Positions 6,117 through 61,818 of a stretch of 64,000 nucleotides of DNA are shown here, piece after piece. How positions within the stretch are numbered: position 1 is the stretch's first letter; the number at the start of each line of letters is the position of its first letter. Location of the stretch: positions 147,118 to 211,117 of IMG/VR virus record IMGVR_UViG_3300009104_001827; one strand, given 5' to 3'. The notes under the pieces were generated by a model. The model did no database searches. It was not told where the DNA came from and saw nothing but the letters and a program-made list of their open reading frames with translations. The translations under genes were made by a program, and so were the position numbers.

Positions 6117-6136
6117 TTTAAAAAATAAGCTAAACT
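6108..6136 (+). promoter_or_regulatory. Sigma70-type promoter, leaderless
   Basis: TTGACT-17 nt-TAAACT; GTG 6143 is 7 nt downstream. Confidence 0.75.
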
Positions 6137-6142
6137 ATAACG

Positions 6143-20900: not shown

Positions 20901-20904
20901 TGTA
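20900..20904 (+). promoter_or_regulatory. GTGTA motif
   Basis: GTGTAAGTTATC-ATG(20912). Confidence 0.55.
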
Positions 20905-20911
20905 AGTTATC

Positions 20912-36621: not shown

Positions 36622-37285
36622 TTCTCAGTATGTCCTCTTTTCCAAATCTAAATGCATGTATACCTCTCTTTACACTTTCCCTGTCGTTAAACAGGTCAAA
36701 CATGGCCGGAAATCCACTCTTTCCATTGATGTCGCTCTGCATAAAGTCTCCACAAATAAACAATTTGCAATTCTCCCCAATTCTAGTGACAAGCGTCGTA
36801 AGCTCCTTATAGGTAAAGTTTTGAGCTTCATCTGCAATTACGATCTTATCCTTCCAGTTTGCTCCTCTAAGATAATTTATCGGCATTGCAGAAATTCTGC
36901 CACTTTCAAGCATTTCCCTTTTGGCAGTATTGTTTTTAGGAAGCATTTCATAAAGCTTGTCCTCCAGTGGCGCCATATAGGGATTGAATTTTTCATCTAT
37001 ATCCCCAGGCAAGGCCCCAAGCCCCTTTTCTGCGCTCTCAATGACTGTGCGGACATATAGTAAATCCATCTTATCTGACGCACTCAAAAGCCTCAACGCA
37101 GAATAAACTGCCATATAAGTTTTAGTGGAGCCCGCCGGTCCGGCGACAAACATTATCTTAGTATCATCGTTGAACGCGATAGACAAAAACCTTTTCTGCC
37201 TATCCGTCAACCTTAGTGAATGGATATGAACGCTTTGTGCCAATTGTGGGATAACAAAATTTTTTTTAGACTTATCGTGAGCCAT
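36572..37285 (-). CDS. phoH: PhoH family ATPase
   Basis: GPAGSTKT, LGALPGDIDEKFNPY, YLRGANW, DEAQN, TRIGENCK, GDFMQSD. Confidence 0.93.
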   Translation of the reverse strand: MAHDKSKKNFVIPQLAQSVHIHSLRLTDRQKRFLSIAFNDDTKIMFVAGPAGSTKTYMAVYSALRLLSASDKMDLLYVRTVIESAEKGLGALPGDIDEKFNPYMAPLEDKLYEMLPKNNTAKREMLESGRISAMPINYLRGANWKDKIVIADEAQNFTYKELTTLVTRIGENCKLFICGDFMQSDINGKSGFPAMFDLFNDRESVKRGIHAFRFGKEDILRSEILKYIIGKLDSAKS

Positions 37286-38269: not shown

Positions 38270-41200
38270 TTAGTCAGTATCTACTTTATTACCAGTATCT
38301 TCCCAGGAATCTTTCCATTTTGCAGACCCCAGTATCGACAGGAAAAGTTCCCCGTTGGGAATTATGGTTCCACCAGGAAGGGCATTCCCTATCTTCTCTT
38401 CCCATGAATCACATATTCCGCGCATTCTAGCCAGGCATTGCGAGTGCGCAGCCCCACCGATGTAAATCACTTCGCAATCACCATCTACGCCTGCGGCCCC
38501 ATATTTATCGCAGTATTCAGTTGTGATTTCAATTAGGTCTGCGTCCGTAAATCCCGGATGGCCTTTATATGGGCCGCCGGGTTGAAAAGTGTTGCTATCA
38601 CTATAATTCGATGCGACCTGCGGATTTCTAGCGAAAGCTTCAGCCTCCTCTTGGGTGTCAAAATAATCGTTGGGAAATATTGACATTGTTCCCGCTAAAT
38701 TACTGCCCTCCCGGACGCCAGCGGCGCCTTGGTGTTTAGAATTATCATGTGATCCGTCGTAATCATCAAAACCAACAACAGGTAATTTAAAAGTTCCACC
38801 CCCACTCTTTACCCACCAAGGGGGGATATGCTCACCGTCCACGTGGGGAAGAGAGTGGTTAGTATACGGAAATACCGAGTCACCCACTGGCGTACCCCCC
38901 CAACGGCCGTCAGGATTATAAGCATTCCACGGGTTCGAGGCGCCGACAACATACGAAGTTCCGGCACCAAGATGGGTAGTGAATTCATCGGACGAATTTA
39001 ACCTAAGAAACGCCTGACATTCGTAAAGCTCCCCCTTCCACCAAGCCCGGTCCCCCGGGTAATATTGCGTTCGCGGAGTCATCGTGACGTATATGTCAGC
39101 ATTATCTCCCGCGCCCTCAGGTTTCCCTCCTTCACTTAGTTCCCAGCCTCCATAATCCCAAATTCTCTCGAGATTTATATTCTCCCATAGCCAATTTCTT
39201 CCAGCAACCCATTTTCTCGTCTTATGATCGTACCAGGAAAACCCTAGTTTCTCCCTTTCTTTTGCCCTGCGTATCACCCAGTTTATCGCCGCATCGCGCG
39301 AAGCAAACATTTTAGACCCCCTACAGGTTATTGATACATCCTCAGAGTCATAAATATCCGTAGAGCCTTTCAGTATGTTGTCGCTTCCTGCTTCTGCGTT
39401 TATGTACCATTTAGTAAGCTCCTGCTTGTTTCCGGAATCTAGGTAGCTCTCTGAATAAAACGCGCCCTTCGCTCCAGTCAATAGCCAGCCCAGGGAATCC
39501 CCATTTTCACCAATGTATTCCCACTTGTTATTTGCTCCGCCAGGAGCATCATCTCCTGTTCCGTAGCCAGATGCACTTCCCCCTTCCTCATTAAATCTCC
39601 ACACCTTCCAAACGCCGCCGTCTTGGGTTTTTACTAAATCCCCCCTATAGTAGCCGGGCGGGGAATATGGACGCACCTGACAGCCGCCCCATGCCCCCGG
39701 TTCTAAGTTGTTGCCGAAACCCCAACCCGACATTTGAAGGGAGGGGTGGAGCTTTCTAAGTAATCGTTCCCATGACTTTTTTCTTAAAAGGGGCTGGTCA
39801 TAAGCCTCACCCAACCACATCGGGCCATTCGAGGAATCCGGAAGGAACTGGTTGGTGACTTTCTTCGCTCCGGACCAGTCCACCTTACCAAAAGCGTCCC
39901 CCACCTCAGTTGGGGGTGTGTTTATCGACGAATTTGCGCCCGCATCCACGTCCGCTTGCGTGGCAATACGATAGTCTCCCCACATCATCGGATGGTCCTC
40001 AGCACCCCCCATCGTTGACTCCCCGGGTACGTTGCGATATATGGGGTCCAACACGGTAGGAGATAATCCATCACTGATCTTGTCGTCATATTCCTCCTGC
40101 CACCTAGATTTACTTTCGCTAGGCGGGGGAAAGGGCTCGTAGGAGCCCAAATGCCAAAAGGCATAAATTGCGCAGGTATCCCACGCAGCTCCCACACCAT
40201 GACTGCCGCAATTTTTAGCCAAGAACAGATCTCCATCAGACAATATTACGTCTCCCGCGCAGTGAGGAAGGCTGGCGTTAGTATAAGCGCTTCTATATAA
40301 GCTTTCTCCTAGTGGTCCAGATCCAGCAGGTTGGGCGGCAGTTCCAGGCTCGCTCGCGTAATACGGCCGATACATCGCAGGCAAACCATTAGTCATAGTT
40401 TCCCAGTCGGCTGCAGACACTCTTCCATATTCCCCCCACGTCGGCCTCCAGTCGAACATTCTCCAGGGATGAAAGAACATTATGGAATTGTAAACATTAA
40501 AAAGACCCCAATCGTGGCCAACTTGACCACCGTACCAAAGGGCATCTGCACTAAGAACATTCCATCCGCTTTTCTTGGCGATAAAAGAGGAATCTCCGCG
40601 ATGCTCCAATTCGCCAATACCCAAACCTAGTTCGCTGGTCCCCGATGCGAAGTTCAGCATGTATTGCCTAATCGAGTCACCGGCACCCGTGGGCCAATAC
40701 CCATTGGGCAAGTCAAAAGTCCACTCCTCCCACTCCTCCCCAAACTCATCGACCCAATCGTCAATAGTCTCGTGAAGCTCGCCATTGACCCACTCCCGAT
40801 CCCACCCAGGGAAAACCACGGTATATCTCTTGCCCAGTTCAATATCTTTCGCCCATATTATTTCCGGGGCATAAATCGTCGATGCCAGCGGATTATATTC
40901 GTCAATTTCCTCCGCATTTATAAACCTTTCGGCAAGTTCAAACCTCAATTCTCGATTATGTCTAGCCGTATATGGCCTATCCTTCCAATTCTCAATCATA
41001 TCTTTGGCGGAATAAAGCGCGAATTTCTCAGGATTCTGGTCAGCGCCTTGATTATGAGAAGTGCAACCTCCGTCGCCGGGAGTGCCGCCGTCGGAAACCT
41101 GATTGTCGGGCCCTCCGTGATGATTGCCGATGACCCAATGCGGCTTAGTCCCTGCCCCGTCCTCAATACTGCTCTTCCAAACCCCGGTGGTCCCAGGCAT

Positions 41201-44200
41201 TGTGTCGTCCCCCCTTATACCAAGGCCTCGATTGTAGTTGTCTGTCGCAGGATCACCCCAATCACCCCAATCTTTAGCCCAGTCGTGAGGCATCAGCCAT
41301 AGGTTTCCTTTATATATAACCCTATCACCATGACGATACCACGTAGAACTGTCCCAATCAAGTATTTCCTGAAATAAATCCGTCCACCATGATTGAATAA
41401 ACTTGGTCCCGGCTTTCGGAAAATCTCCATATTTTATTGTGCCGCTCGGAATGTCGTTGTATGCCCTCCATAAGCGACGGTTACGTTTGGGGCTACGATG
41501 ATCCTGAATGGATATTATATCTCCGGCGGATATATCATTTTCCCACAACCAGTTCATACATTCCCCTACGGGGATATTAGTTAAATCCGTGACCGCCAAT
41601 TCATTGTATTGAGAACTTCGTTTCGATTGAGAGCAGTAGGAGTCCATTTGATTTTCTCGCCCACGCCAGGAATGGGCCTCATCGGGCCCAATCGTAAAAT
41701 TATTCATTCCGTGCCTTTTGAGTTGGCCGTAAGCTTCCATGACATCTGTCATCGGGCCAAACCCAAAGTCTACCGCTCGCTGAGGGAATTTATAAAAACC
41801 AGCATATCGATTGAGCGAGCCCGCTCCCTGTTGAGCAAGGAAGGCTAACCAATGCTCGTAATTAGAGATTCCGGGGGCGGTATGTGGAGCCCCCTGCGAC
41901 TGGCGTCTGTGCGGTAGTTGATTACCGGAAGAAAAGACTTGTCCCGCAAGCGTAAAGGTAGGATATGAACCAAAATTGACGCCAATCCATACCTCTAATC
42001 TCTGTGTCCAATCCCACCCTTGGCGAAGCTGATTAAGAGCAAAAACCCAATCCCAAACGCTATAACCGTTGCCCGCATCCAAGCCTTCCAATTGTTCTGC
42101 CCCAGCGGGAAGATACCTCTGCCAGTAAGTTGGAGAGGGAACCTCACGGTTAATAAAAGTATAGCCTTGAGTATCAGTCAATTCTATAGTTTCTTTATTA
42201 TCTGAGGTTCGTTGATTCCATCCTGGAACATCGAATACGTCAAATTCCCCCAATCCGGAAAAGTTGTCGGGTTGTCGTTGATCAAGGCCCGCTGAATAAT
42301 TTCGATAATCCACCGCAAGGGACACCTTGCCAGCCTTGTCGCCCCTGTCTGCCCATGCCAGCGCGCAATGGCCGCCTATTTTTTCGGCGAAACCCGTGTA
42401 AATTTGGCTATGACCAATGGAGGTGGCGTAACCTCGCAGGAACCTTTTATACGGATCGCCGCCCCACTTTTGGCCCAGCTCCATTGTTTGGTGCATTATG
42501 CCTATCTGAGTTCGCCACCTGTGCTCCTTTTCGAGGCGGTCCACAGACCACATACTACTGTAACCAGTTTTCCCAGCCCCGGCCCCGTCTTTATCGGGAG
42601 CTATGTATGTGCCGTTAGGAATGGGCGCACCACCCTCAATACCTCCTTGACCCTCTTCCACCCTCCAATGCATTCTATATACTGTTCCACCAAAGTTGAA
42701 CCTATCGCCGGGCTTCAAAAATGTATAATTATCGTGAGAAATTGCATCGCCGACCAAACCGTGATTGTGATACTTGCCCAATTTGGTCATGGTGTTGGAG
42801 TTCGGATCCAACCAACCCCAAGACACATTCTCGCCGACGCCTTGGTTTTCTTGCCCGACAAGCAAACTGAATTGCGACTTCCAACTTTGATGAGCCTTAT
42901 CCCCGAAGGGCAAAGACCACGGGTCGCACATCCAGGCCCCAAACATGGCGGTTGAGGGGAAATTTATCCTTCTATACTCCAAATGACCCTGCAAGAGCAA
43001 AGAAAATACAGAGTCAGGTATTACCTCCGGACAACCTTGAGTAAGCGCTCCGGTCTGCAGTCCCAATATTTTTGTCAGACTCCCGCGTCCTGACGCCGCA
43101 GTAAGCCTTGGGTTCTTTGGTTCGTCCTTCACTCCAAACTGAGAGCTCTCAGCTTTAGTGGTATCAAAATCGCCAACAATCCAAGCATCATCATTAAATC
43201 TGTCATTGAAATTTCCGCCGAAAATAGAGTAGCCGAAAGTGTACGCCAAAGAATCTCCAAACGAGCTATGCAAGCCCCAAGTATCGGTCGCAGCCTCTGA
43301 GTATCTCTCAATTTTGGAGTATATTGGCCATTTTATGTCAGGATGATACTCTCCTTCATTCCCTGCGGTTGCCATATCGGGCACCTCGGAAATGCTACCC
43401 GCCGGCTTCCAGCTGTAAGTTTCGTCGCCAGTAAACCGGTTCATAAATTTAAACGCATCAAGCGCGCCTCGGGGGTGGTGAGTAGGGAGTGCTGGGGCCC
43501 ATTGGGAAACGCTCATCTCCCCCATCACTTGCCACCAATTATACATGCCATCAGGAGGATTTTGTGAATTATTCGCATGATTCACTACGCCGGGAAAGTA
43601 ATAATTGTTCCATCCGTGCTCAGAAGCATTAGAGAATAAATCGATCAAGTCCAGTTGACCTGCTGTGGGCCATGATTTAAAATTGAAGTCCCGTATAAAG
43701 CTCGGCGCGAACGGATCTAGTGAACCCCACCCGCAGCTCGCGTCTCCCCACGCTAAGCTCACTACATGGGAAAGCATGTTCGTCCAGGTGACAGTTATAC
43801 CGGTCGGCGCATTGGAGCCAGACACAAAACTGCCCAATAGATTATGGGTAAAATCTATATATTCGGTGTCGAGCAAATTCTTCTCATTCACTATATTGGT
43901 ATTACTGTCGCCATAGAATGGGTTGACAGATTCTCCGAAAATCGAACCTGCCGTCCCGAGATATTCGTTGTCTTGCCCTCCATAATATAAATACATAGTC
44001 CCTGACCCCCCATAATCGACTTGACTGGTGACGCCGACGCCCGCATGGTCAAGGTCTAGGTGCCACCCTGAAATTCTTTCGTCGGCCCAGGTTGACGCAT
44101 TAGTTCGAAGGGAGGTATAGCTCTTTCCTCCAATAATATCCCCGGAGGAATCCGGGGCATACATGACCTGGAAGCCCTTGGAAAATAACTCCCCGCTCTC

Positions 44201-47200
44201 GTTTACATAACTAATTGTTGCCCATCTATCAAGCTGCCATTCCCTGTAAAAATATTGAATTGGGTTAACATTAATCATTGACGCGGAGGACTCCCTCCAA
44301 TACAATTCCCCAAGAGAACTGCCAGGTTCAAAGGAAAAGAAATGGTCTTTAATACATTGGTAAATCGTGCCTTTATGAGTTACAAAATCAGGTTCGCGAC
44401 CAATAAACGCAGAACCCGCCTGATCGGCATTGGACCCTGCTACCATATCACTACCATAACCGTGATGAAATAGTGTATTTGGTTGCCCGTTTAGGAGCTG
44501 CGAATGCCCAGAGGGAAGGCTTGTTCGGTATGATTTGTTTGATACCCATGCGTCAGCCAATCGATTAATTTCCGGGAGAACCTTGTCCCGAATATCCTTC
44601 GACCCCTTACGACACAACTTGCCATCGATAAATTGTGGCCACTTTCGAATTCGCCGCTTGGGTTTACTCCAAAAGCCAAAAGAATCCATAAATACCTGCT
44701 TTGCAATAATAGGCTCACCCTCTCGACCACTTGCGTCATCAAGAATTACCGCAGGAGCCCCCTTGAACGAGTAATTCTCTAAATAAGGACGCAAACCAAC
44801 GCCCCCACATTTGTATGACCTTCCTTCCGATATAAATGTCGCACAATCACCTTGTAAAGATATGAATTCTACATTTGGAAAAATAAATTCGGGGCCATCC
44901 AAAAATTCAGATTCCAATCCGAGCGCATTCCCAAGTGAGCGCCCCTCATATTCATCCCTATCAGAGCCCGATATTTTATTCTCACCCGTTCCAAAAAGAT
45001 TTCCCGATTGAGAAAGAATGAGAGAATTATTACCAGAGGCGGCGACAGCGATAATCTCGTCTAGTTCCACGGCTTGATTGTTGTTATTACCATGAGAAAT
45101 TAAATGCGGTTTTATAAAGATTTCCCTAGTGCAGAAATGCGTGTCACCGAATGCTTTTTTATATAATTTGAAATTTGCAGTGCGGGGCATTTTAATTTCC
45201 GACGAAGGAAAAGTGTGAGTAGCACCGTCGTTTGGCATCATTCCTAATTTTCCCAAAGGGAACCATCCAGACAAACCCGTCGACCCAAGTGTGCCACCTG
45301 CGCCATTTTCCTGATTAACAAGGGCATGCATCGCCTCACCAATAGAGCCAAACGTGAGAACCTCCACGTCAGGCTTCTGCCATTTCCCTAATTTGTTGGT
45401 ATCCGCCCAATCCGACTTGAGCGTTTCAGGGGGCAGAGTCTCAAGTCCTCCGTTCTCCGTTATGCTCGGAATGGATATTTGGAGATGCTCCTGAAGTAAT
45501 GTACCTTCTACGCCTTCGCCGGGGCCGACGTAAACGACATGAGAAACGTGGTCTATCCAAACCCGACTTCCGGGCTGATAAGTTTTACCATAGGCCCATT
45601 TTTCAGGAGGTAGTGCCGGTTGCTCTATTGCGCTCCACGAAGGATCGTAAATTGGGTTAAGGCTAGAGGGGGCGGTGCCCTCTAACTTATAAAAACCTTT
45701 GCCGGACTCCCTGCCCAATCTATCGCCTAAATCGAAATCGCTTTCGATTCCCCCGGTTTTGTTTCTCCAATCTATTTGCTGCAGGGAATTGTCCCCAACG
45801 CCGAACACTTTGCCTGAGGCAGTCCTTATTAGAATGTGGTCGGAGCCAGCCTCAACTTGCAGCGCCTTATCAGAGCCATAATCCTCGTGGTCGTATAGCG
45901 TATGAGGCTCGGGAGTAAGAGTTGTACTGCTAATCTCATCCTCTATATCTGCCAGCGAATTTGTGCTCAGGTCATAGGTTTTAGTGATCGCCTTGGGTGC
46001 GGGCATCGACCATTTTTTGCCGTCCACTCGCTCAAGGGATTCGCTAAAGCCTATATCGCTAGTATTGTCGTCCTTCATGGAAACGAACACCAGAGTACCG
46101 AAAAGGTCATCTCCATCAGCGACCTGAGCGGTAACAATGTCGCCCTCATTATAGGAAGATTTCGATATTGTACTGCCTTGATATTCTGGGTCCTCACCCA
46201 TGCCGGCAGCCGCAGTATAATCGAAAAACCCAGAAAACCCGCGTGGCGAATACTTTATATGATTTTCCCAACTTCCGATGCCAGGCAAATTGGACCCGTA
46301 AATGGCGTCGTTATCAAGTATCCAACCCGCATGAAAGACAATATCCCCACTGTCATGAAATTCTTCGTTCACGGCCGCACCACCAATTTCGGCAGAAAGC
46401 AAATACCTGAATTTTCCCTCATCGCCCAGTAACCCCCATCCAGTTGGCTGACCCCAGTCATATTCCCACATGTAAAAAGTGTGATACCCTTGAGCAAGTA
46501 CGAGCGGTGGATCGAGGTCCTCATGATGACCTCCCCCATTATTCTCGGGCCACGTCCAAGCGCTCGCTGCCATCACTTTGTCCTGATCATAGCCCGTACC
46601 TGTTTCTCCAGCAACGCCATCGGCATAAGCTCGTACGTCAGGAGGGCCGTCATCGAGAATCGACCACACAACCCTATGGTCATTATACGAAATCATCCCG
46701 TATCTTGTTTGAACAATAGTGCTCCAATCTCCAGCGGTTCTTGCATCGGTCGTTTTTCCCGGAGAATACATAACTCCCCACCTTCCTTGGGTCAAAATCT
46801 CAGGCTTAATAGTTCTTAAAACAATCCCAGAAGAAGGTCTTACGTATATATGGAAGAAAATTCCTGAATCCTTCCTCCAGCCGGTCCCAGTGCCGGTAAA
46901 AGCTAGTTTCCCTACGATCTCTCCGTCAATCACGGGGAAGAGGGCATTCCCTACGCCATAATTTTCCGCATTAGACGATATTTCAGTAAAATCAATATCT
47001 ATCCCGCTCATAAAACACTCGAAGCGCTCGCCGTCCTCCTTCTTAGTTTTCTCTGCGTCAGTAATGTAAATCCATTGTCCGTATTTAGCGGTATAATACC
47101 AATTGCCGCCGGTTTTGCCCAATGACGTCAGCTTATTGTTTGCAGCCTGGGAGGCCCTGGCAAGGAAGGTGTGTCCTAATATCGGGTCTTCCACCCAATC

Positions 47201-50200
47201 CCTCATATAGGTTTGACTGACATACTTATTACGGAACCATTCGCTTTTCGCCAGGGTCCTTCGCTCAAGGGTCGACTTATGCCTGATGGCCCCGTATCGA
47301 GTGGCTCGATCTGCTTCCGTCAGGGGCCCTGCCCAATGCAGCTTTGCATATTCTTCGCCCGTCATCCAAGGGTAGAGTTCTTCTCTAGCATCAGCTACGT
47401 CAGTCCAAACATTCATATAATAATCCCAGTCGGTTTGGTCGCCATACCAAGTATAACCGGCGTAATCCTCCTTTTGTTCGTAGTCCTCTAAGGGGTATGG
47501 AAGTATCCCGGTCACCATATCTGTACTAAGTTTTCCGGCAGCACCACCAATTCCATTTCCAGCCCGGTGCTGGATCCGATATTCAGTTTTAACCTCCGCG
47601 TCCTCAGTCCATATCTCTGCGCCATATCCTAACAATAATGGAGCGTTTATGGTAAGGTTGGTCACCAGTAGTCCTGCAGGGTTATTAACGTTCCCCGCAT
47701 TTTTCACATACATCACCAATGCATTATTTCCTGCCGCTCCAGCTCCAGCCCTAAAGATATTACTAGCCCCGATGCCCTGGGGTCCGATGTCTATGGAGTT
47801 AAGCTCCCCAAACCACCCCCCATACCAGGCTGCGGTCACAGGCTTGCAGGAAACGCTATATATAAAAGCTGTCGAGTCACTCGAGGTAGTGTGGCATATA
47901 AATTCTACGCTGTGAGAGGTATGCGTGGCGACGAAAGTAAACTTTGTTTCCGTCCATCCAGACCCCAAATCTCCGACGTCAATGGCTTGGTGCCCACTTC
48001 CTGCATAATCGTTAACTAGATTTCCTCCTTGTACCGCTTCTAAGTTGTCAACAGTCGCGGTCGGCACGCCTCCCTCCCACGCCCAAATTATTGCTCCAAC
48101 ATCAGGCTCGGAGTAGGCGGTCCGGTATGAGACAAAAAACCGCACCTCATATTTCTGGCCCACCGTCAGGGGTTTTGGATAATTCGGCCCATACCTTTCT
48201 GCACTCAGTTCAGATCCTTGATGCCACTGAGTGAAGCCTGCTCCGCCAAGCTTGTCGGGATTCCATGTTCCAAGCTGAACGTATTCATTAACCGATGGGT
48301 TGAGGGATCCGGAGTCTTTATGGCCCCCGAATCCATATGTGTTAGGCGTATAATCATACCCCCAGGGCACGAGGTGCAATCTTGCCGCGCCACTGAGGCC
48401 TCCTGTTTCAACATGAGACTGTAACCCCCAATAATAATTCGCGCCCCCGTATTTACTTCGCATCACGCCTGGCTCAGTGTCGTAGCCCAACTGGCGCGAT
48501 CCCCACGCACTGCAATTGTCCTGTATAATTACAACCTTGGCGAAATTATAAACCCCCATACAGGCCAAATCAGAGAGGCTTGGCTTATTGGAGTTGTCCC
48601 AGGTGGTCGGATGATTTGGCCGGCTATAGTCGTAGCTTTTGTCAAGCAAATTACTGAGATATTCAAAACGGTTACCGTGGTTATCCAGATGCAATTCTAG
48701 CGTCTGAGCCACGTAGTGGGTCGTTTGGTTTAATTGTTCATACGCTGGATAATGCATCCCGTGGTCGCGAAGCTCCTCATCCAAGTTTGAGCCACTCGCC
48801 CCAAACCAAGATGTTGCAGTATTCCCAAACCCGTCCCTGTCGTTATTCTCCCCCCAAAAAGTCCCCCATTTTGTAACTCCGGGTAAAATTTGTTGTTCCC
48901 CAGATTTGCGAGCATGATCGTGCCAGTATGTGGTATACTTGGGGTTGCCGTTGTTGTCCACAAAATCCGGATGATCCTCTAGCCATAACCACACGTTGGC
49001 AGTCCAGTTGTCGGGAAATAATGGTCGCCACCCAAAAAGGTACTGGTGGCCATTGCCACCAGCATAACCAAGCATAGACTTATTAAAGTCCCAATTAGTC
49101 AGGTAAGATGTTGTCTCCCATTCCTCACCAGTAACCAAGTCGGGATTTATGCTGTGCCACCCGGCCTCACTGTGGATTTGAATATCCAGCATTGTATTAT
49201 CCACTGCGAAGTCGAATGACACTGTAACCTGTGATACATCAATTCCTTCATCAAGGTGAAAGGCTTGATAGAAAACGGGAGTGGCTTGCGGCCATAAAGT
49301 CGGCACCCCACCTTGTTCACTCCACCAAACCCCCACCCAGCTACTTCCTTCTGGCGCATCCAGCCAGTTCCCCGGAATAAGATTGTTTGGTATCCAGGCC
49401 GCTGGGTAGAGGGGGTCGTTCGCCGTTGCGGGTAACACGCCGTTGGGCTGCACAGACCAAGCGGTATCCTTTTTGCTGTCGGAAGAATATTGGCCCCCAA
49501 ACTGGACCCCAGTATTATAAATGTTAATCTCTTTGTGAGATTCTCGCTGAGTCAGTACGGACCATACCGCAACATCAGCGGGGGTTTTGTCCACCGTAGT
49601 AGTGACGGCTCCCTTGGCATATTGTTTATCAAATTCGTTGGAATTATAATAGGTTGCGGTGCTCGCCCTCCAATATCCATTATAGAACCAAATTAAATTA
49701 TCTACATTTGCAACGTGCCTATATACCGGGTAACCACCGGTTGGACTGGGGAGGTCGACCTTCCGGTACGATCCCGCAATCCCCACGCTGGGGTCACTGA
49801 TGGTTGTGCCGTCCTGACGGATTACATTTCCACCAAAGAACTCAATGGAACCCCAGTCTTCTTCAGCGATCCTTTTAACATCTGGATTTAAACCATTGCT
49901 GTCCGTAGCAACATAGGCTGGCCCCGTGTTTGGCCAATATTTATGGAGATAATTATTGTTTAAATTATCGAAATTTGTGCTGGCTGCATCCTGGGTAACC
50001 AGCGGGGTGATACTCTCGCTTACGCTATTCCACTCGCCAGGAATAACTCCAGGAAAGGTGTGGGCTCCAGCGCCTTGATCCCCAATTTTACTCCAAAGGG
50101 AGCCCGAGTAGGATACATATTGACCGTTAACATAATCTATATGTTCTATATATGGCTCCCAGGTTTCTCCGTAGGCAATATTGCCTTGTATTAGCGATCC

Positions 50201-53200
50201 ATATTTTACGGCTTCCCCACCCGCAAATGGGTCGGGATCGCGGTCCGTCATATGATGAATCAGGCCCCAGTTGTCATTTTGCCAAAGTTCATTTACCGTT
50301 AAATCTCCGAACGAATCAAAGGTATCGCTCCCACCATGGAACATAACATTATCCGCTCGCCTGACCTCGCCATGGGTTGCTTCGCTGTGGAAATCCAAGC
50401 CTTGCACCGGGATGTCCTTGCACCCTATAATTGACCCTAGGATTTTTACATCGCCGTCTTCTGTGACGTAGATCGTAGAATGCTCATTTGTTGACGCCCA
50501 AACAACATTATCATCTGTTAATTTTACCGGAAACGGGACCGCCGGAGCATTGCGGTTTGCAGCCAATTTAAGGCAGTTCGCCCTAAGATTATTGTCATCG
50601 TTATTATTGAGAGAGTGCTGACTCGGGCGATCCATGTATGAATAATTTGCTCGATCCTTAAGCCTATACATCGCAAGGGCGAGGCATTCAGTGCCAGATA
50701 CCGTCATGGTCTTGCTATCGTGGAAGTAATCTATAACGCAATGATTTTTGTGCGATCCCCCGTAAGGCAGGTCTAGATCTGGCCAGCCTATGTACTCCCA
50801 TTTGGGACTAATCCCCGGCTCGTCTTCCGGAAGGGCGTTTTCGATGGAGACCCATCGTTCGCCCAAATGCTCCCTTTCCTTAAACCAACTAATGGACTCA
50901 TTATCGGTCCACGGAGCTGCTTCGCGGGCTCCATTGTATTTCTTGTCGTGCCCCCACCAGCTCCGCTCATTCCAATCCGGGGTGCCCCATTCGCGCGTAG
51001 TGTTAAAGCGGTCCCCATCGTCCCATTGAGACGTTGGGTACAAATTCTGAAATTTACCATGTGGCCACGAGATGCCGTTCCAGGAAGTGAGCTTGTTGGA
51101 AATTTCCGCATTATCCCGATACGGAAAAAGCCAAGCTGGAACCATCCACCCTCTGTCATTTTGTACGGCCGCCCCCGCCATATGTCGCTCTTTGCTCCCC
51201 TCAAACCCTGCGACAACAAAATGTTCCCTCTTCTTCGTCGCAGAATTATCGGTATCTGTGCCGCCATAAAATTCCCAAGCGGGCTTTATCATCATGGTAG
51301 AAAGACTCTTAGCGTACTCCGATGTACCATCGAGAGAGAACGAGACATCATAAGCACCCTCCGCTCCGGATCGAGCCTGTCTTGCGAATGGAATATAGTC
51401 CTCAGAGTTGAGAATAAAATGAGTATTTACGACCTTGGGAACGCCCCGGTTGTCAGGCTTATCAAACCCGACGCATTCAATCCCCCCTTCTTTCCAGAAG
51501 TTTATATTGTCGTACCACGGAAGAATTCTTCCTGCGATTTTTAATTGCTCCTGAGAGGCCCACCAAGGTGTCACGCCAGCAGGATATAACTCTTCCTCCG
51601 GAATCCATGTTACATTATTATGCAAATAGGAATCTTGCTCGGCGCTAGTCTTATCGAACCAGTCTAACGGAAATGTGGCCCATGCCATCCTCTCCCATTG
51701 CGGGGCAGGGTTAGCCCGGTTATGATCTTTTGTTAGGTACGTCGCCCACCCCGCAAGGTGGGGGTCGTTTTTATTGCTTGCAATTGGGTCGCCTGCGGCG
51801 TGGTTAAAGTTGGCATATGATAAAAGGTCGAATCTGTCTTCGGCATCAATCAAATCATGAGACCAATCTCCCCAGTCTTCGGGATCGTCGCTAGAGCTAT
51901 TGAAGCTTTTATCTGTGATGCCTAGGGAGTTGTTTTCGTTCTTCCCGAATCCATATAGCTTCTTGTCTGTAGTAATAAATACGGTATTACCTCCCCCAGA
52001 CCTAACGAAATCTATGTCGGGTTCTGGGTCTAATAAGGTATCAGTCGTGCCGTTCGCGTATATTTTTACCCTTTGCAGCTCGTCGTCTTGTGCGTCCTTC
52101 AATGGGGCACACATATTATGCTTTCCAAACGTATCTAAGTTCCATTCTAAATTTGAACCGTAATATGTTTCAGGTTTGCCGTCAATTTTCTTATAATTAC
52201 TAATTCCGAGGTACCCCAACTCGGAGCTGTCCATTCCAGAGGCATACAGCTTATTATTTGAGATCATGAATCTATTTTGCCAGCCCAAACCAGCAGAAAC
52301 GGCATAGGTTTTGCTAACGGCATTATTTACGTCAAGATACGTATCTGCGTCCACATCCGGAGCCGCGCCACTTACGTTTGTAATCTTAACTGACATTGGG
52401 AGGATCGCCGTGTTCTGTAGTCCCGCAAATGAATTGCCCAATTTAAATTCTGAAACGAACCCTAAATTCCCCCTCAAGACCGTGGGCGAATTAAAGGCAT
52501 AATTAAATAAATCAACATCTTTCCTTTGTGTGCCCCCAGGGTTCTCATTAGAGAAAAGGGATAACGTCAATTCTTTTGTTGAACTCATATAGCTCTGGCC
52601 ATCAACGGCTTGCATCTCGAATGAGATATTAATATTCAAGCCGGAATTGGTAAATATATTTGACATGTTATCAAATGGCCTCAAAAGATATTCGCTTTCG
52701 CCATGAGTGGAGTCGAGTATATTTTCTGCGCTGGGACTAACTCCTCCCGCTGGTTCGCCTGAAGCATTATGAGCGTCTAAGCATGAATAAAATACCATTA
52801 CGTCATTTGATTGGCTCAGCTCGTTTTGCGTCGGCAAACTTCCGGAATCCTCATTGGAGTTCCACACCACACCTCTTTCCTTCGCGTAGACTATATCTCC
52901 CAATTCATAGGGTAAGTTATTTTTCCATTCATCCACTCGCTGCCACATGGATTCAAACAAAGACGGCTGAACGCCAGAAGACGCGCGCCGAGCGTAATAT
53001 AATATATTTAGTTCCTTTGTGAAATCTCCGGTGTCGAATGATTGATCGTGGGTCCAGGGAGCAATCTCTCCCTCTGGTCCGCTGATGTTTTTCCATTTTG
53101 GCATTACCTGCAATTTATCTCCAAGCTGCTCAAGCAGTCCTATATTAGATCCGTTGTTTTCTATTTTGAGTATTGAAGAATTTTTATGGGACACTTCATC

Positions 53201-56200
53201 GTATTGGTATTCAATTTTACTATTCATGCCGCCCAACAAAGAATCTGAATCGAGGAGCGACTCACTAATAATCCTTGATGCATACTCCACAGGTCGAACA
53301 AATACCCAAGATTCACTCACGCCAGGTACTTGGCCTGCGGGGATATCAGTATCGGCTTGCCACACATAGGTGCCATCGTGCACTGCCTCGTCAGCGGAGT
53401 AGGCCTGGTTGGAAAGCCACTGAGATGGTTCGCCGATCCTTATGTAGGGACTTTCCATAATCCCTGCGTATGTCAGTCCAAAATCAGAATAAGAATCGCC
53501 GGTGTTTATCGGCAACCTTAGGTATCTTCCTAAAACATTAGCATTGGACATAGAGGAAATAAACCCAGAGTAGGTCGTAAAGTTATTCCCGTCCGCCCCC
53601 TTTAGCTGGGGGATTAGTTTAATTGTTTGATTGGAATTGATGCTGATTTCCCCACCATCATATATTGCGCCATGATTTGGATGGCCAGTATCGGCGTTTC
53701 CTCCAGTATATATTTCAGTTGTTAACTCTATTGTTGGAGGGTATGACTCATCCTCTTTAACGAACTTAATTGGATTTACATCGCCCACTCCTCGACTATC
53801 GAGATTAAATCCTGCGTCGAGATTGAAGTCGATATCACTATCAATCGAGTCCACCCAACCCCTGAAGGCCCGTATGGCAGGATGCCTATCTTCATCTTGA
53901 TTATTCTCGTTAAGTGGGTGTGGAAGGTCTCCCGAAGAAAGGGTGTCGCCTTCTGCCCTCAGATCAACGTTCCAGTCCTCATAGTTAACACTTACATAGT
54001 CAAGCGATGCCAAAAACAAAGGGCTATCTGCATCCGGAACGCCGCCGACCCAAGTATCTATCATATGTGTTGTGGGATATTTTATTCTTGGAGTCCAGAA
54101 CTTCGCATTGTTGCCGGAGGCATCATAGGTTTTTAATCTTGGCCCAAAAATATCCAGCCTAGAGTTGAAGGCTTCAGACACGGCGTATTCGCTTGAACCT
54201 TCGGCCTTATGTATAAAATCAAAATCTCCTTCAGTTAAAAAGTATTGTGGCTCCACGCCAGCAGCGATCTCCTCTGAAGATGGATAGGTGCGATCAAGGT
54301 CAAATTCCCTACGCGCCACCGGCTGCCAATATTCACTAGGACGAATAACCAATGTATAGTTGCTCGTAAATCCACTCATAGTCCCGGAATTTATCGACAC
54401 GGGGAATTCGTAGATTTTTTTACCGACATACCCGGAAATGTCAGCCTTATATTGAAGGCCCTCTATAACGGTTGAGTTTTGCAAGTTCCCTTCCAAAACA
54501 AAATTATCATCCAATAGGGGAGTTGCATCCGAGACATAACAGAACTGTTTAATTTTAACCCGCCATTCATTGTCGTCCATTTTTACGGCGTCACCAATTC
54601 GATAGTAATTTTCATAGGTAAGATCATATGAATAATTATCCGAACCAAAGAGGTCCCTCTGTCGAATTTTGAATTTTCCATCCAATTCCTCCAACCCGTA
54701 ATATTGAGCGTAAGCCCTTCCTCGATTGTCATTATTTGCGGGATCGACATTAGGGTCAATGCGCTCTGCGGTAAATTCGTTCTCGGTAATTTCGAGCCAA
54801 GTCGTTTCGGCATATAAGTTCTTTCCTCTAAATCTGGAATATTGTAGATCTTCTACTAGGTTCGATAAAAAATACGCCGTCTCACTTGCGGACTCTTTTG
54901 GAAATATCCCAGGAACAATCCCCACACCGGCCGGATCTGCAGGAGAATCTGTATCCTTTATGCACTGAAAGCAATATGAGGCGACCGCTGCGTCTGCCTT
55001 AAGAAATAAAAACTCAGCACTATCCAAAAGGTTCGTATTCTCATCTGTGGGATAGCGCCCGGCCCACTCCTGGTAGGTCAGGCTTTCCCCCGAATTCGGG
55101 TCGACCATAGTAGGGGTTTTCTCCTTAAGTGTGACAAGATCTCCGACCTTGTAATTTTCGGCCTGCTCCATATCCCACGGAGCTATATCATACAATCTTT
55201 CAGACATTAATCCAAGTCCGCTTGCTCCATCAAGAGAATTAAACCACTGAAGTCCTAGCGTAATCCCCGATTTGTTATTCGGGGGAGAAGTAGATAGGCC
55301 CGTCTGTGACGACTTAAAGATTTTAACCCAACCATCGTAGAGGGTAATCTGAGTAACCATGGATAATGGTGAAATCGCGGTATTGCTGAGAATACTTAGC
55401 CTGGTCCACTTCTCTTTGTTTAAAATTGGATCGTTATCTGCCGATGCCCCCATCGAGACATTAGCCTTAAAGAATAAATTTAAATGTAATGGAAAAAAGT
55501 TTTCATTATCATTCTTTAGGGATTTGTAATATATTTTTGCTCCGTCGTCTTGATATACGTATACTGTGTTATGCTCGTTTCCCGGAGAAACCCATTCAGA
55601 ATATACTTTCTCTTGTCTCCAGGCATCACACGCGATTGCTGTGGTCACCTCCCACCAATCTTCCCGTGGGACCCTAGTCATATTGCCTCCGGAATATTCC
55701 TTGGTATCATTCCATTCAGGTATATTTGCCAAGGTCTGAACGTTGCCCTGGGGATTTCCCGTACGATCAACAGTTAAACTGAAAATAGATTCCTGCTGGA
55801 GGTCCGATCGCCCCAAATCTATAAAGTGTTTTGCCTCAAATAAATTTTGCGATGTATCCGCATCAATCGTAGTCGACAAAACCTGATTGCCATCGGCAGT
55901 AAGATCTTTAAACTTACTACCGTCAAAACCCTTAAAGCCAGTCTGAAGCAACCCTAATGCTGCACTAAACTCTGAATCCGACATCTCGTCAGTTCTTTTT
56001 AGAATAGGCAGAAAAGCGGCGTCAACGTGAGAATTGATAAATTTCTTGCCTTCATTCTCGATCTGATCTGCCCTGCCGAGCTTGTTGCCTAATATTAAAT
56101 AGTGACAGGGGTTGTCTCCACTAACCGAGGCGCTACCGGTTATAGTCTTAATTGAGAGCAATTTGGTCAAAGCCTGATCCTGGGTGCTGGACTCAAGTTC

Positions 56201-58039: not shown

Positions 58040-58554
58040 TACTTGCTAAAAATTACCTTTGAATATTTATCGTCTATGGGTTCTATTTTTCCACCCATAA
58101 ACTTTAGCCATCTAATACCGAGGCTATTATCCGCCTCAACAATATTAACCAAATGATCAAATTCTTCCCCAAACAGCCAATCAAAATGCTCTCTGGATAT
58201 TCTCATAAATTCATATACTGCAAACATAGCTTTAAGGTTGCCAAATGACTTAAAAAAGTCGCTCTTAGATTTAATCATGTCCAGAGAATTCCTAGAGCCG
58301 AGCACCCAGACCTGACCTATGCGTTCTTGAGGGGAATGGGCGACCCCGGTGGAGCCGATATATGTTTCGTCTTTTAAGCAAAAGCTAATTGTTCGAATTG
58401 ATCTGTTGAAGGTTTCATAAACATGCTTTTCGTGGTTTGGCCACCCGAGATAATCCGAATGTCGCGAGTCCACGTTCCTTGGATTCAATGATAGCTCGAT
58501 AATATCTGAGTCGATGACATCCCTGACATAACCGTGTTTTCCTAATATTTTCAT
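58039..58554 (-). CDS. GNAT-fold acetyltransferase, DUF2833/T7 gp13-like
   Basis: GQVWVLGS, LVNIVEADNSLGIRWLKFMG; TAATG-coupled to the giant gene. Confidence 0.7.
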   Translation of the reverse strand: MKILGKHGYVRDVIDSDIIELSLNPRNVDSRHSDYLGWPNHEKHVYETFNRSIRTISFCLKDETYIGSTGVAHSPQERIGQVWVLGSRNSLDMIKSKSDFFKSFGNLKAMFAVYEFMRISREHFDWLFGEEFDHLVNIVEADNSLGIRWLKFMGGKIEPIDDKYSKVIFSK

Positions 58555-58655: not shown

Positions 58656-59255
58656 ATGAGAATTTCGCACAAAAACAAATGGATCTTCCTGTCGTCATCC
58701 AGAACCGGCTCCACTTCTACTCGTAAAGCATTAGATAAATTTAGTGACATAAAGTCGGTGCATTATTCTAAATGCGAAGAAGAGCAAAATCCATTCTATA
58801 ACCATATAAGCTTAAGGGAGGTTCAATCTATATTCAAGCATGATAATATAGACTTCAAATCATACACAACATTTACTGCGGTACGCAATCCATGGGACAG
58901 GGCGTTATCTTTGTATTTTCACTCTCAACAAATTATGCATAATCCTGCCCCCACCGCATTTAGCGATTGGATAAAAAAAGTACAAGCCAGAGGCCCTTTA
59001 TATGGTCAAATTTACAACCAGTGCTTAGATGATAAAAATCAATATGCGATAGATTCTATAATCAGGTTTGAGCATATGCAAAAAGACTTCAATGTTGTTT
59101 GCGACAAAATAGGGATCTCAAGACAACAACTTCCACACGTAAATGCAACCAAACACAAACACTACACCGAATACTATAACTATGAAACCCATGAAATCGT
59201 TGCCGAAAAATACGCAAAAGATATTGAACATTTCGGATATGAATTTGGAGATTAA
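58656..59255 (+). CDS. Sulfotransferase family 2 protein
   Basis: ISHKNKWIFLSSSRTGSTS (5'-PSB), VRNPWDRALSLY (3'-PB), IIRFE. Confidence 0.85.
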   Translation: MRISHKNKWIFLSSSRTGSTSTRKALDKFSDIKSVHYSKCEEEQNPFYNHISLREVQSIFKHDNIDFKSYTTFTAVRNPWDRALSLYFHSQQIMHNPAPTAFSDWIKKVQARGPLYGQIYNQCLDDKNQYAIDSIIRFEHMQKDFNVVCDKIGISRQQLPHVNATKHKHYTEYYNYETHEIVAEKYAKDIEHFGYEFGD

Positions 59256-59257
59256 AA

Positions 59258-59842
59258 ATGATAAGTCACAAACATAAATTTATTTTTGTTCATATCAATA
59301 AAACTGGAGGTACGAGTATTGAAGTGTTATTAAAGAAGTATTCAAACAAATTTGAAAAACATCAATCAATTATTGACTTAAATAAAGAAGCATCTTCTAA
59401 CGATTATTTTAAATTCACTTTCGTAAGAAACAGTTGGGATAGATTCTTATCCTTGTACAAATACCGAATAAAAACAAACCAAACAAAGCTTGGTAGTAAT
59501 CCCATACCCTTTAAAGAATGGGCAAAACATATCTATGATAAGAACCCGAAATATTACAATACTCCTAACAAATTTAAACTTCTTATGTTATCAGATCAAC
59601 TTGACTGGATCACAGATGCAAATGGTAGTGTGAACATGGATTTCATCGGAAGATTTGAAAACCTCCAAGAAGACTTTAATATCGTGTGTGACAATATTGA
59701 AATTCCACATTCACAACTTCCACATATAAACAAAACTGAACACAAACATTATACCGAATATTACGATGAAGAAACAAAGCAAATCGTTGCCGAAACATAC
59801 GCAAAAGACATTGAGTATTTCGGATATAAATTTGGAGATTAA
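59258..59842 (+). CDS. Sulfotransferase family 2 protein
   Basis: FVHINKTGGTSI, VRNSWDRFLSLY, FIGRFENL. Confidence 0.88.
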   Translation: MISHKHKFIFVHINKTGGTSIEVLLKKYSNKFEKHQSIIDLNKEASSNDYFKFTFVRNSWDRFLSLYKYRIKTNQTKLGSNPIPFKEWAKHIYDKNPKYYNTPNKFKLLMLSDQLDWITDANGSVNMDFIGRFENLQEDFNIVCDNIEIPHSQLPHINKTEHKHYTEYYDEETKQIVAETYAKDIEYFGYKFGD

Positions 59843-60478
59843 ATGATTACTTTTATTCACATAGGAAAATGCGGCGGCACTACAATCAAAAGAACACTGA
59901 TAGATAATGCTGTTAAATTTAGGCATATTCACCTTAAACGTCCTGAGCATGAGCCTGACTCAAAATATCTTATTGCATTGAGAAATCCAGTAGAGCGTTT
60001 TATTTCAGCGTTCTATTGGCGCAGATTTTTATTACTCAGCGGTCAAGAAGCTGGAGGAAAAGAGCTAGAATTTTATAAAGAGTATAAAGATTTGAACAAC
60101 GTATGCGAGCATCTTTTTGACGAGAACAGCAACTTAAATCCATTGATTGACTCGAAAATTCACCAACATTATACATGCGGACACCCCTCTCATGTAGGCA
60201 TGGGCATCGATTATTATATTGGAGGCATAACAAGAGAACTGACTCCGAAAAATGTTTTTGGCGCGATATGCACTGAAACACTCTCTCAAGATATGAAAAG
60301 ACTGTTTGACGTTGAAGTTACCAGGCATGCTAGAAAAAATTCTGCGAACAAGTTAGAAACAACACAGCAATCAAGATTTCTCTTAAAGAAATATTTAGCA
60401 AAAGACTATCAATGTATTGATAAATTATATTTATCGAATATCTTATCCGAAGAGCAATACGAAATATTAAAAACATGA
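59843..60478 (+). CDS. Sulfotransferase family protein
   Basis: FIHIGKCGGTTI, LRNPVERFISAF. Confidence 0.82.
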   Translation: MITFIHIGKCGGTTIKRTLIDNAVKFRHIHLKRPEHEPDSKYLIALRNPVERFISAFYWRRFLLLSGQEAGGKELEFYKEYKDLNNVCEHLFDENSNLNPLIDSKIHQHYTCGHPSHVGMGIDYYIGGITRELTPKNVFGAICTETLSQDMKRLFDVEVTRHARKNSANKLETTQQSRFLLKKYLAKDYQCIDKLYLSNILSEEQYEILKT

Positions 60479-60484
60479 AAAAAA

Positions 60485-61816: not shown

Positions 61817-61818
61817 TT

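What the first reader, a model, noticed from the sequence alone, without database searches (positions are those of the whole stretch)
47650..49420. Nested domains: a beta-sandwich split by a ~450-aa insert that holds another carbohydrate-binding-like domain
Seen: the first half of a galactose-binding-like sandwich (AAWIP...FYQAFHL...VTVSFDFAVDNTMLDIQI, ~49400-49180) has its expected second half (F.AG...NALVMYVKNAGNVNNPAGLLV, ~47760-47660) about 450 aa later. The gap contains a DUF642/CBM-like unit (LTVGQKYEVRFFVS...WTETKFTFVATHTSHSVEF...AFIYSVS, ~48170-47850). The whole assembly lies inside the gap between RCC1 blades 3 and 4. Inference: three levels of nested insertion.
Basis: inference. Interest (0 to 1): 0.6.

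Follow-up and report, generated by a model that had tools for sequence, protein, structure and literature searches.

The report
Possibly split beta-sandwich in giant phage protein
Inside a 6,589-residue orphan protein of a 211-kb marine phage, a carbohydrate-binding-like domain sits between two beta-strand segments that may pair into one sandwich around it, but the pairing has only weak computational support and this kind of domain insertion is already known in phage adhesion proteins.

Summary

The region (aa 2850-3480) is an orphan. An exhaustive HMMER search of 1.84 billion representatives found only one relative, 86% identical. Pfam, PHROGs and PDB sequence scans found nothing.

The CBM-like unit is supported at fold level only. 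AF2 gives the core (aa ~3290-3404) pLDDT 60-87. Its best structural matches are CBM4/CBM22/MAM-type jelly rolls at Z no higher than 5.1. Language-model look-alikes are DUF642/CBM_4_9 clusters. The Pfam models for these families do not match.

The central claim, that the two halves form one sandwich, got "weak support". ESMFold2 co-folding of aa 2855-2985 with aa 3402-3472 scored ipSAE 0.56 against 0.00 for the best control, with low pLDDT. AF2 on the whole region failed (pLDDT 30).

The "galactose-binding-like" label has no profile support: joined halves score no better than shuffles against GH2_N, F5/8-C and PA14 HMMs. Only three RCC1 repeats pass Pfam, so "blades 3 and 4" is unverified.

Comparison with the variant phage shows divergence hot spots inside the insert.

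Nesting is plausible (about 0.45) and a tandem arrangement is not excluded.

The parts
38270..58039 (-). Giant ORF of 6,589 aa (P0001) that holds everything below. It is an orphan protein of a 211-kb phage.
   Evidence: ORF list and translation. The only relatives are P0002 (identical) and P0003 (82-86% identical). The variant keeps the frame open, with dN/dS 0.2-0.3 in conserved parts.
49085..49477 (-). 'N-half', aa 2855-2985: a beta-rich, tryptophan-rich (7.6% W) segment holding TAWSVQ, AAWIP, SWVGVWW, VFYQAFHL, VTVSFDFAVDN and MLDIQIH. Proposed first strands of a split sandwich.
   Evidence: Motif positions. No family match. In ESMFold2 its pLDDT is 55-62 with the C-half present and 45-48 with unrelated partners. 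95% identical in the variant phage, dN/dS 0.23.
48323..49084 (-). 'Insert A', aa 2986-3239: a W/Y/G/N-rich module of unknown fold. It contains a divergence hot spot at aa 3070-3150 (window 48590-48832).
   Evidence: No Pfam or PDB match. AF2 pLDDT below 35. Up to 23 nucleotide differences per 20 codons against a background of 0-3; dN/dS 0.57.
47828..48322 (-). CBM-like unit, aa 3240-3404. The confident nine-strand beta core is aa ~3290-3404 (window 47828-48172). It contains a divergence hot spot at aa 3310-3390 (window 47870-48112).
   Evidence: AF2 core pLDDT 60-87. VIA-align best Z 5.1-4.2 to MAM, EclA, SGBP-B, CBM4 and CBM22 domains. Atlas features give DUF642/CBM_4_9 at 0.92. Atlas shape rows include DUF642 and CBM-cenC clusters. 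Pfam models do not match. dN/dS 0.61.
47624..47827 (-). 'C-half', aa 3405-3472: a glycine/asparagine-rich three-to-four-strand segment (ELNSIDIG, NALVMYVKN, AGLLVTNLTI). Proposed closing strands of the split sandwich.
   Evidence: Motif positions. Co-folds with the N-half at ipSAE 0.56 against 0.00 in controls, which the tool rates as weak. AF2 does not attach it confidently to the CBM-like core (pLDDT below 40).
51932..52006 (-). RCC1 repeat, aa 2012-2036. Nearest Pfam-significant blade upstream of the region.
   Evidence: PF13540 RCC1_2, E 4.3e-5, 23.6 bits against a cut-off of 22.
45776..45859 (-). RCC1 repeat, aa 4061-4088. Nearest Pfam-significant blade downstream of the region.
   Evidence: PF13540 RCC1_2, E 4.4e-7, 30.0 bits.
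44978..45055 (-). RCC1 repeat, aa 4329-4354.
   Evidence: PF13540 RCC1_2, E 1.8e-5, 24.9 bits.

Best explanation
Residues ~2855-3472 of a 6,589-aa orphan phage protein form a discontinuous (nested) module. A beta-sandwich is built from strands of aa ~2855-2975 and aa ~3405-3472. One of its loops carries a ~430-residue insertion made of an unknown ~250-aa module and a complete CBM4/DUF642-type beta-jelly-roll (aa ~3250-3401).

The most likely function is glycan adhesion. The sandwich acts as a rigid stalk that presents the inserted jelly roll and the unknown module to host-surface polysaccharide. Specificity would be tuned at the two patches that differ most between phage variants (aa 3070-3150 and 3310-3390).

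Shown: the gene is real and under constraint, the region is an orphan, aa 3290-3404 has a jelly-roll-like core, and the hot spots lie inside the insert.

Inferred: that the two halves pair, that the unit binds carbohydrate, and that the protein is exposed on the virion.
For: - ESMFold2 co-folding of the two halves gave ipSAE 0.55/0.56/0.68 against 0.00 for all three controls. Both fragments gained confidence together: chain 1 pLDDT 55-62 against 45-48, partner 47-50 against 38.
- The CBM-like unit ends with its own closing strand at aa ~3401 and is of normal CBM size, so the 68-aa C-half is left without a domain of its own.
- Fold-level CBM likeness comes from three weak, concordant sources.
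- Divergence between the two phage variants is concentrated inside the proposed insert. dN is 0.12-0.14 there against 0.02 in the N-half and upstream, with hot spots at aa 3070-3150 and 3310-3390. Both halves stay near background.
- CBM insertion into loops of a beta-sandwich is an established design in phage adhesion devices: 'evolved Dit' proteins carry CBMs in galectin-domain loops (PMC7291167).
- The upstream gene, which shares one base with the giant ORF, matches an internal virion protein family (phrog_308, E 2.4e-10).
Against: - The pairing score is in the band the tool itself calls weak: at or below 0.60, 5 of 78 true complexes and all 4 passing mismatches fall there. The partner's pLDDT is below 50. 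The controls were intact unrelated proteins, not other sticky beta fragments.
- AF2 on the whole region gave pLDDT 30.5 and no pairing information.
- No profile evidence ties the joined halves to any sandwich family. No uninterrupted paralogue exists elsewhere in the protein (hhalign P > 0.1).
- No homologue lacking the insert exists to show it is an insertion.
- The N-half is followed by further plausible strands (aa 2974-3022) that could close it locally.
- The elevated divergence does not fill the insert edge to edge (aa 2990-3069 and 3150-3300 are quiet), so it does not mark the insertion boundaries.
- Carbohydrate binding and virion location are untested.
Confidence: 0.45

Rival explanations
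1. Beads on a string. The region is a linear run of independent domains: a complete ~170-aa sandwich (aa 2855-~3030), an unknown module, a CBM-like jelly roll (aa ~3250-3401), and a small ~95-aa beta domain (aa 3405-~3500). There is no discontinuous domain, and the motif likeness of the 'halves' to one family is coincidental.
For: - After the N-half come more strand-like stretches (EEWETTSYLTNWDF, YLFGWRPLF, ANVWLWLED at aa 2973-3022). After the C-half come LLLGYG, EIWTED and KTEYRIQH, enough to close each locally.
- No profile supports a single family for the joined halves.
- The pairing test is only weak and lacked fragment-type controls.
- Tandem beta-sandwich arrays are the commonest design of phage fibres and adhesins (established knowledge).
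Against: - The co-fold score is 0.56 above every control, and both fragments gained pLDDT together.
- AF2 saw no strands in aa 2966-3029 (low confidence).
- The C-half is unusually glycine/asparagine-rich and short for a free-standing domain.
Confidence: 0.38
2. The C-half belongs to the CBM-like unit as extra C-terminal strands or a lid. The N-half is an unrelated separate domain, so there is one enlarged jelly roll and no nesting.
For: - The two are adjacent in sequence.
- Some VIA-align rows made without trimming extend to model residues ~199-201, which lie in the C-half.
Against: - AF2 leaves aa 3405-3472 at pLDDT 22-38, not packed with confidence on the pLDDT 60-87 core.
- The core already ends in a typical closing strand (AFIYSVSCKPV).
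- The C-half co-folded with the N-half above controls.
Confidence: 0.1
3. No defined sandwich at all. The flanking segments are linkers or novel folds, and only the aa 3290-3404 core is a recognisable domain.
For: - Orphan sequence with no family hits.
- Low AF2 confidence everywhere outside the core.
- The Atlas recognition value for the N-half (2125) is below the 2300 mark.
Against: - Both flanks are 93-95% conserved with dN/dS 0.2-0.5, and have alternating hydrophobic strand patterns.
- ESMFold2 gives the N-half pLDDT 55-62 in the presence of the C-half.
Confidence: 0.07

Closest known systems
'Evolved Dit' distal tail proteins of siphophages of Gram-positive bacteria (Lactobacillus J-1, lactococcal 936/P335, streptococcal phages)
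   Same: One or two carbohydrate-binding modules are inserted in loops of a peripheral beta-sandwich (galectin) domain of a phage adhesion protein. The inserted BppA-type CBM resembles CBM4 (PDB 1GUI) (PMC7291167). 1GUI is also among the weak structural matches of the unit here (Z 4.3).
   Different: - No Dit, galectin or BppA sequence signal was found here.
- The host protein is a 6,589-aa RCC1-repeat giant of a 211-kb phage, not a ~300-600-aa baseplate hub.
- The insert is larger (~430 aa) and includes an additional unknown module.
- The pairing of the host sandwich is not demonstrated.
CBM family 4/9 (Pfam PF02018), CBM22 and DUF642 (PF04862) beta-jelly-roll modules
   Same: Size (~150 aa) and the strand pattern with a closing strand. 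Weak structural likeness: Z 4.1-4.7 to 4bj0, 1gui, 1ulo, 3p6b, 4xun and 2w5f. Language-model and shape look-alikes agree.
   Different: The Pfam models do not match at E <= 10. Z is below 8, which the tool warns may mean only a common arrangement. Ligand-binding residues were not identified.
RCC1-like seven-bladed beta-propellers, including the RCC1-like proteins of jumbo phages (phAPEC6 encodes eleven; PMC7247149)
   Same: Three repeats pass the Pfam RCC1_2 gathering score. RCC1-like proteins are known in jumbo phages.
   Different: The significant repeats are about 2,000 and about 240 residues apart, instead of ~50-60. Only three of seven blades are statistically supported. A single split propeller is an untested inference.
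Galactose-binding-domain-like sandwiches (GH2 N-terminal sugar-binding domain PF02837, discoidin F5/8-C PF00754) and PA14 (PF07691)
   Same: Motif-level pattern only: a W-rich start, then '...F.L......v.f.fa.DN..l.i.i', and later 'G.N.L.h.V.N....P.GL'.
   Different: Profile tests are negative for each half and for the joined halves.

Membership tests
Discontinuous (nested) domain: one sandwich made from aa 2855-~2975 and aa ~3405-3472 | The two sequence-distant segments pack into one beta-sandwich | tested here: inconclusive
   ESMFold2 co-fold ipSAE 0.56 (median of 0.55, 0.56, 0.68). Best of three controls 0.00. Partner pLDDT 47-50. Runs agree in at least 58% of contacts. Verdict 'weak support'. 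AF2 on the whole region was unusable, pLDDT 30.5.
Discontinuous (nested) domain | Relatives exist in which the host domain is uninterrupted | tested here: not met
   There are no relatives other than an 86%-identical variant that has the same layout. There is no uninterrupted paralogue inside the protein.
Galactose-binding-domain-like sandwich (GH2_N PF02837, F5_F8_type_C PF00754) / PA14 PF07691 | Significant profile match of the halves or of the joined halves | tested here: not met
   Pfam scan of each half at E <= 10 found none. PF02837 against the whole phage at E <= 10 found none. Local HMMs against joined constructs scored -1.8 to 0 bits, while shuffles reached 1.1-4.2 bits.
CBM_4_9 (PF02018) / DUF642 (PF04862) | Match to the family profile above the gathering score | tested here: not met
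   No hit at E <= 10 on aa 3235-3405 or on the whole phage genome.
CBM_4_9 / DUF642 | Beta-jelly-roll fold of ~130-160 aa superposable on solved CBM4/22 modules | tested here: inconclusive
   AF2 core aa 3290-3404 at pLDDT 60-87. VIA-align Z 4.1-5.1, rmsd 2.2-4.4 A over 83-107 residues. This is below the Z 8 level the tool asks for. Foldseek found no match at E <= 1e-3. Atlas TM is about 0.4.
CBM_4_9 / DUF642 | Carbohydrate binding | not testable with these tools
   Needs glycan arrays or binding assays with the expressed unit.
RCC1 beta-propeller | RCC1 repeats above the Pfam gathering score | tested here: met
   PF13540 hits of 23.6, 30.0 and 24.9 bits (cut-off 22) at aa 2012-2036, 4061-4088 and 4329-4354.
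RCC1 beta-propeller | Seven blades closing into one propeller, with the studied region between blades 3 and 4 | tested here: inconclusive
Evolved Dit (CBM inserted in a galectin domain) | Dit belt and galectin domains detectable | tested here: not met
   No Pfam or PHROG hit of that kind anywhere in the protein. The likeness is architectural only.

The most novel reading that the evidence does not exclude
A three-level 'Russian doll' architecture. A single seven-bladed RCC1 propeller has blades spread over ~2,500 residues. One inter-blade loop carries a ~1,500-aa assembly. Within that assembly a beta-sandwich is itself split by a ~430-aa insertion that displays a CBM-like jelly roll and a second, fold-unknown variable module. 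All of this sits in an orphan ~730-kDa phage protein that serves as a modular, recombination-tuned glycan adhesin.
Probability: 0.2. Interest if true: 0.55.

Novelty: new variant of a known kind. Interest (0 to 1): 0.35.

Why it matters
If the nesting is real, it extends the 'CBM inserted in a beta-sandwich loop' design beyond small baseplate proteins of Gram-positive siphophages. It would then also occur in a giant, sequence-orphan RCC1-repeat protein of a marine jumbo phage. It would also give a concrete map of which ~80-residue patches vary between co-occurring phage variants, and these are candidate host-specificity determinants. It also illustrates a limit: alignment-dependent predictors fail for orphan giant phage proteins, so topology claims need single-sequence folding or experiment. 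If the arrangement is simply tandem, the finding is ordinary.

Tried and rejected
- AF2 on aa 2850-3480 with the only possible alignment (2 sequences) gave pLDDT 30.5 and was unusable.
- Exhaustive HMMER, word searches on the region within giant proteins, on the piece alone, and on aa 1900-4470, and scans of IMG/VR, GTDB genomes and JGI metagenomes found only identical copies and one ~85% variant. No deeper alignment could be built and no insert-less homologue was found.
- Pfam, PHROGs and PDB sequence scans of the sub-pieces found nothing meaningful.
- 'HHpred on the joined halves' could not be sent to any remote library, because a joined string has no reference. That step was left out. Instead the joined construct was built from files inside the sandbox. 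It was scored against HMMs I built from GH2_N, PA14 and F5/8-C domains fetched from Verrucomicrobiota and cyanobacterial genomes. There was no signal above shuffles.
- I hunted for a remembered 'PEP-CTERM-type sandwich' motif in 6 genomes. It was not found, so that memory lead is untested and dropped.
- Too few CBM_4_9 examples were retrieved (3) and no DUF642 examples, so no local HMM was possible.
- hhalign of the halves, the joined halves and the CBM unit against the rest of the protein found no paralogue.
- A diversity-generating retroelement as the cause of the hot spots was rejected. There are no direct repeats in the gene and no second copy of the hot-spot DNA anywhere in the 211-kb genome.
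- Block exchange of the whole insert was rejected, because divergence is patchy and not edge to edge.
- Foldseek against the PDB found no match at E <= 1e-3.
Full report
**Context**

The window is bases 147118-211117 of a 211,117-bp IMG/VR virus record that CheckV rates complete. Its genes include:
- a T4-type large terminase (28483-30354, minus strand)
- a DNA polymerase III alpha subunit (18330-20900)
- a ClpB-like AAA+ protein (20912-23440)
- a papain-family protease (35677-36621)
- PhoH (36572-37285)
- sulfotransferase and glycosyltransferase genes (58656-61816)

The finding lies in a single 6,589-aa ORF, 38270-58039 on the minus strand. The conversion is aa = (58039 - coordinate)/3 + 1. 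The ORF immediately upstream, sharing one base with it (58039-58554), matches an internal virion protein family, phrog_308, at E 2.4e-10.

**The observation**

- N-half motifs at aa 2880-2955 (window 49402-49175)
- CBM-like motifs at aa 3291-3397 (48169-47849)
- C-half motifs at aa 3429-3459 (47755-47663)

The gene is real. A variant phage (protein P0003) keeps the frame open. Its DNA was recovered as L155 from a 119-kb marine metagenome contig. dN/dS is 0.2-0.3 in the conserved flanks.

**Relatives**

The region is an orphan.
- An exhaustive phmmer search of aa 2850-3480 against 1.84 billion cluster representatives returned one protein, P0003, at 86% identity.
- Word searches within giant proteins, among 347-1104-aa proteins, and over aa 1900-4470 found only P0002 (identical) and P0003.
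- IMG/VR holds two identical copies, and GTDB genomes hold none.
- Pfam, PHROGs and PDB sequence scans of the whole protein and of six sub-pieces gave no meaningful hit in aa 2600-3760.

As a result, no alignment deeper than two sequences could be made, and no homologue without the insert exists for comparison.

**The CBM-like unit**

AF2 on aa 3240-3472 gave a mean pLDDT of 49.7. However, a nine-strand core at aa ~3290-3404 reached pLDDT 60-87.

VIA-align against 48,161 PDB representatives gave its best matches to:
- the MAM domain of meprin (Z 5.1)
- the EclA sugar-binding domain (Z 5.0)
- Bacteroides SGBP-B (Z 5.0)
- many CBM4, CBM22, CBM61 and CBM16 modules
- phage tail CBM-type domains (Z 4.1-4.8)

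All of these are below the Z 8 the tool regards as more than a common arrangement. Foldseek found no match at E <= 1e-3.

Language-model features put DUF642 and CBM_4_9 clusters first, at 0.92 with 154 shared features. The Atlas shape search listed DUF642/PEP-CTERM, CBM-cenC and GH10+CBM_4_9 clusters at TM about 0.4.

The Pfam CBM_4_9 and DUF642 models find nothing in the entire phage at E <= 10.

I conclude that this is probably a CBM4/DUF642-type jelly roll by fold, at roughly 0.75. It is not a demonstrable member of either family.

**The split sandwich**

AF2 on the full aa 2850-3480 gave pLDDT 30.5 and says nothing.

The one direct test available was ESMFold2 co-folding of aa 2855-2985 with aa 3402-3472.
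- ipSAE was 0.55, 0.56 and 0.68 (median 0.56).
- The best of three controls scored 0.00.
- Partner pLDDT was 47-50.
- The runs agreed in at least 58% of contacts.
- The verdict was 'weak support'.

By the tool's calibration the mark was reached by 51 of 78 solved complexes and 2 of 108 mismatched pairs. At or below 0.60, however, there were only 5 of the 78 true complexes, together with all 4 mismatches that passed.

I note that each fragment's own confidence rose when the other was present: chain 1 went from 45-48 to 55-62, and the partner from 38 to 47-50.

I also note that the controls were intact unrelated proteins. They do not control for the general stickiness of incomplete beta fragments.

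**Profile tests of the family label**

A joined sequence has no reference, so it was not sent to any remote library. That step is left out of the remote searches.

Inside the sandbox I built joined constructs from the stored files. I scored them with hmmsearch --max against HMMs made from 16 GH2_N, 6 PA14 and 9 F5/8-C domains. These domains were fetched from Verrucomicrobiota and cyanobacterial genomes.

Joined, contiguous and single-half constructs all scored between about -2 and +0.6 bits. Shuffles reached 1.1-4.2 bits. hhalign found no uninterrupted paralogue elsewhere in the protein.

The 'galactose-binding-like' label therefore has no support beyond motif reading.

**A serious rival**

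The N-half is followed by further strand-like stretches (aa 2973-3022). The C-half is also followed by strand-like stretches (aa 3468-3492). Each segment could therefore close locally, giving a plain tandem array.

Against this rival stand only the weak co-fold result and the short, glycine/asparagine-rich nature of the C-half (17.6% G, 14.7% N).

**Evolutionary pattern**

P0001 and P0003 are 95-100% identical over most of their length. The divergent blocks are at aa 2901-3200, 3301-3400, 3701-3960, 5301-5400 and 5701-6200.

At codon level, the background is 0-3 nucleotide differences per 20 codons. There are two hot spots:
- aa 3070-3150, with up to 23 differences
- aa 3310-3390, with 8-13 differences

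| Segment | dN | dS | dN/dS |
|---|---|---|---|
| N-half (aa 2855-2985) | 0.023 | 0.10 | 0.23 |
| Insert A (aa 2986-3239) | 0.126 | 0.22 | 0.57 |
| CBM-like core (aa 3290-3404) | 0.137 | 0.22 | 0.61 |
| C-half (aa 3405-3472) | 0.053 | 0.11 | 0.48 |

Both dN and dS rise in the hot spots. This points to patchy exchange with diverged alleles rather than to pure positive selection.

There is no diversity-generating retroelement signature. The gene contains no direct repeats, and there is no second copy of the hot-spot DNA in the genome.

The pattern fits inserted modules that carry variable, probably ligand-contacting surfaces on conserved flanks. The quiet stretches inside the insert mean it does not delimit the insertion.

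**RCC1 context**

Three repeats pass the Pfam RCC1_2 gathering score: aa 2012-2036, 4061-4088 and 4329-4354.

They are also not found by an HMM built from the three good blades.

The studied region does lie between significant RCC1 repeats about 2,000 residues apart. This is odd for a propeller and compatible with a split one. 'Between blades 3 and 4', and hence 'three levels', remains an inference.

RCC1-like proteins are known in jumbo phages (PMC7247149).

**Comparison with the known**

The nearest precedent is the 'evolved Dit' design. There, one or two CBMs, often of the CBM4-like BppA type, are inserted in loops of a galectin sandwich of a phage adhesion protein (PMC7291167).

The present case would share the architecture but no detectable sequence relationship. 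It would be larger and would sit in a very different host protein.

**Verdict**

- The CBM-like reading is reasonable at fold level.
- The nesting is plausible but only weakly supported (about 0.45, against about 0.38 for a tandem array).
- The family label and the blade numbering are unsupported.
- Interest is moderate to low unless a structure confirms the multi-level nesting.

Noticed in passing
window 38270-58039 (-): The 6,589-aa ORF (about 730 kDa) is rich in G, S, D and N and has 3.4% tryptophan. It is essentially an orphan. Among 5.8 billion proteins, the only relatives are an identical copy and one 82-86% variant. That variant is labelled 'Verrucomicrobiales bacterium' MAG and sits on a 207-kb contig, which is probably a binned phage genome.
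   Followed up: partly
window 46160-46972 (aa ~3690-3960) and 39440-40939 (aa ~5701-6200): Two long blocks of the giant protein are only 12-64% identical, or replaced outright, between the two phage variants. The surrounding sequence is 95-100% identical. This is the mosaic module swapping typical of host-recognition proteins.
   Followed up: partly
window ~41285-41356 (aa ~5562-5585) and scattered elsewhere in the ORF: There is a sub-threshold CBM_5_12 match (E 4.6e-5, 23.8 bits against a cut-off of 26.2). Many 'Y..GD.V...G..Y/W' mini-motifs occur along the protein, for example at aa 1146, 3963, 5568, 6130 and 6326. They suggest repeated small chitin-binding-type modules.
   Followed up: no
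window 58656-62532 (+): A cluster of sulfotransferase-family genes lies next to the giant gene: two Sulfotransfer_2 proteins, one of them fused to a GT25 glycosyltransferase domain. These are possible glycan-modifying auxiliary genes.
   Followed up: no
window 18330-23440 (+): The phage encodes a DNA polymerase III alpha subunit and a full-length ClpB-like double-AAA+ protein. The ClpB is only ~40% identical to any bacterial ClpB. Several of the best hits are Verrucomicrobiota (Chthoniobacterales, Opitutales, Lacunisphaera, Akkermansia), but other phyla score equally, so it gives no host call.
   Followed up: partly
window 35677-37285 (-): A papain-family cysteine protease (Peptidase_C1, E 2.8e-18) and a PhoH-like ATPase lie just downstream of the giant gene on the same strand.
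   Followed up: no
window 56443-58039 (aa 1-532 of the ORF): The first 532 residues of the window's ORF are absent from the annotated P0003 (which starts at the Met of MRRGYVH...). P0002 is 202 residues shorter than P0001. The true start codon of the giant gene is therefore uncertain.
   Followed up: no
window 1-64000: ARAGORN finds no tRNA or tmRNA genes in the 64-kb window.
   Followed up: yes
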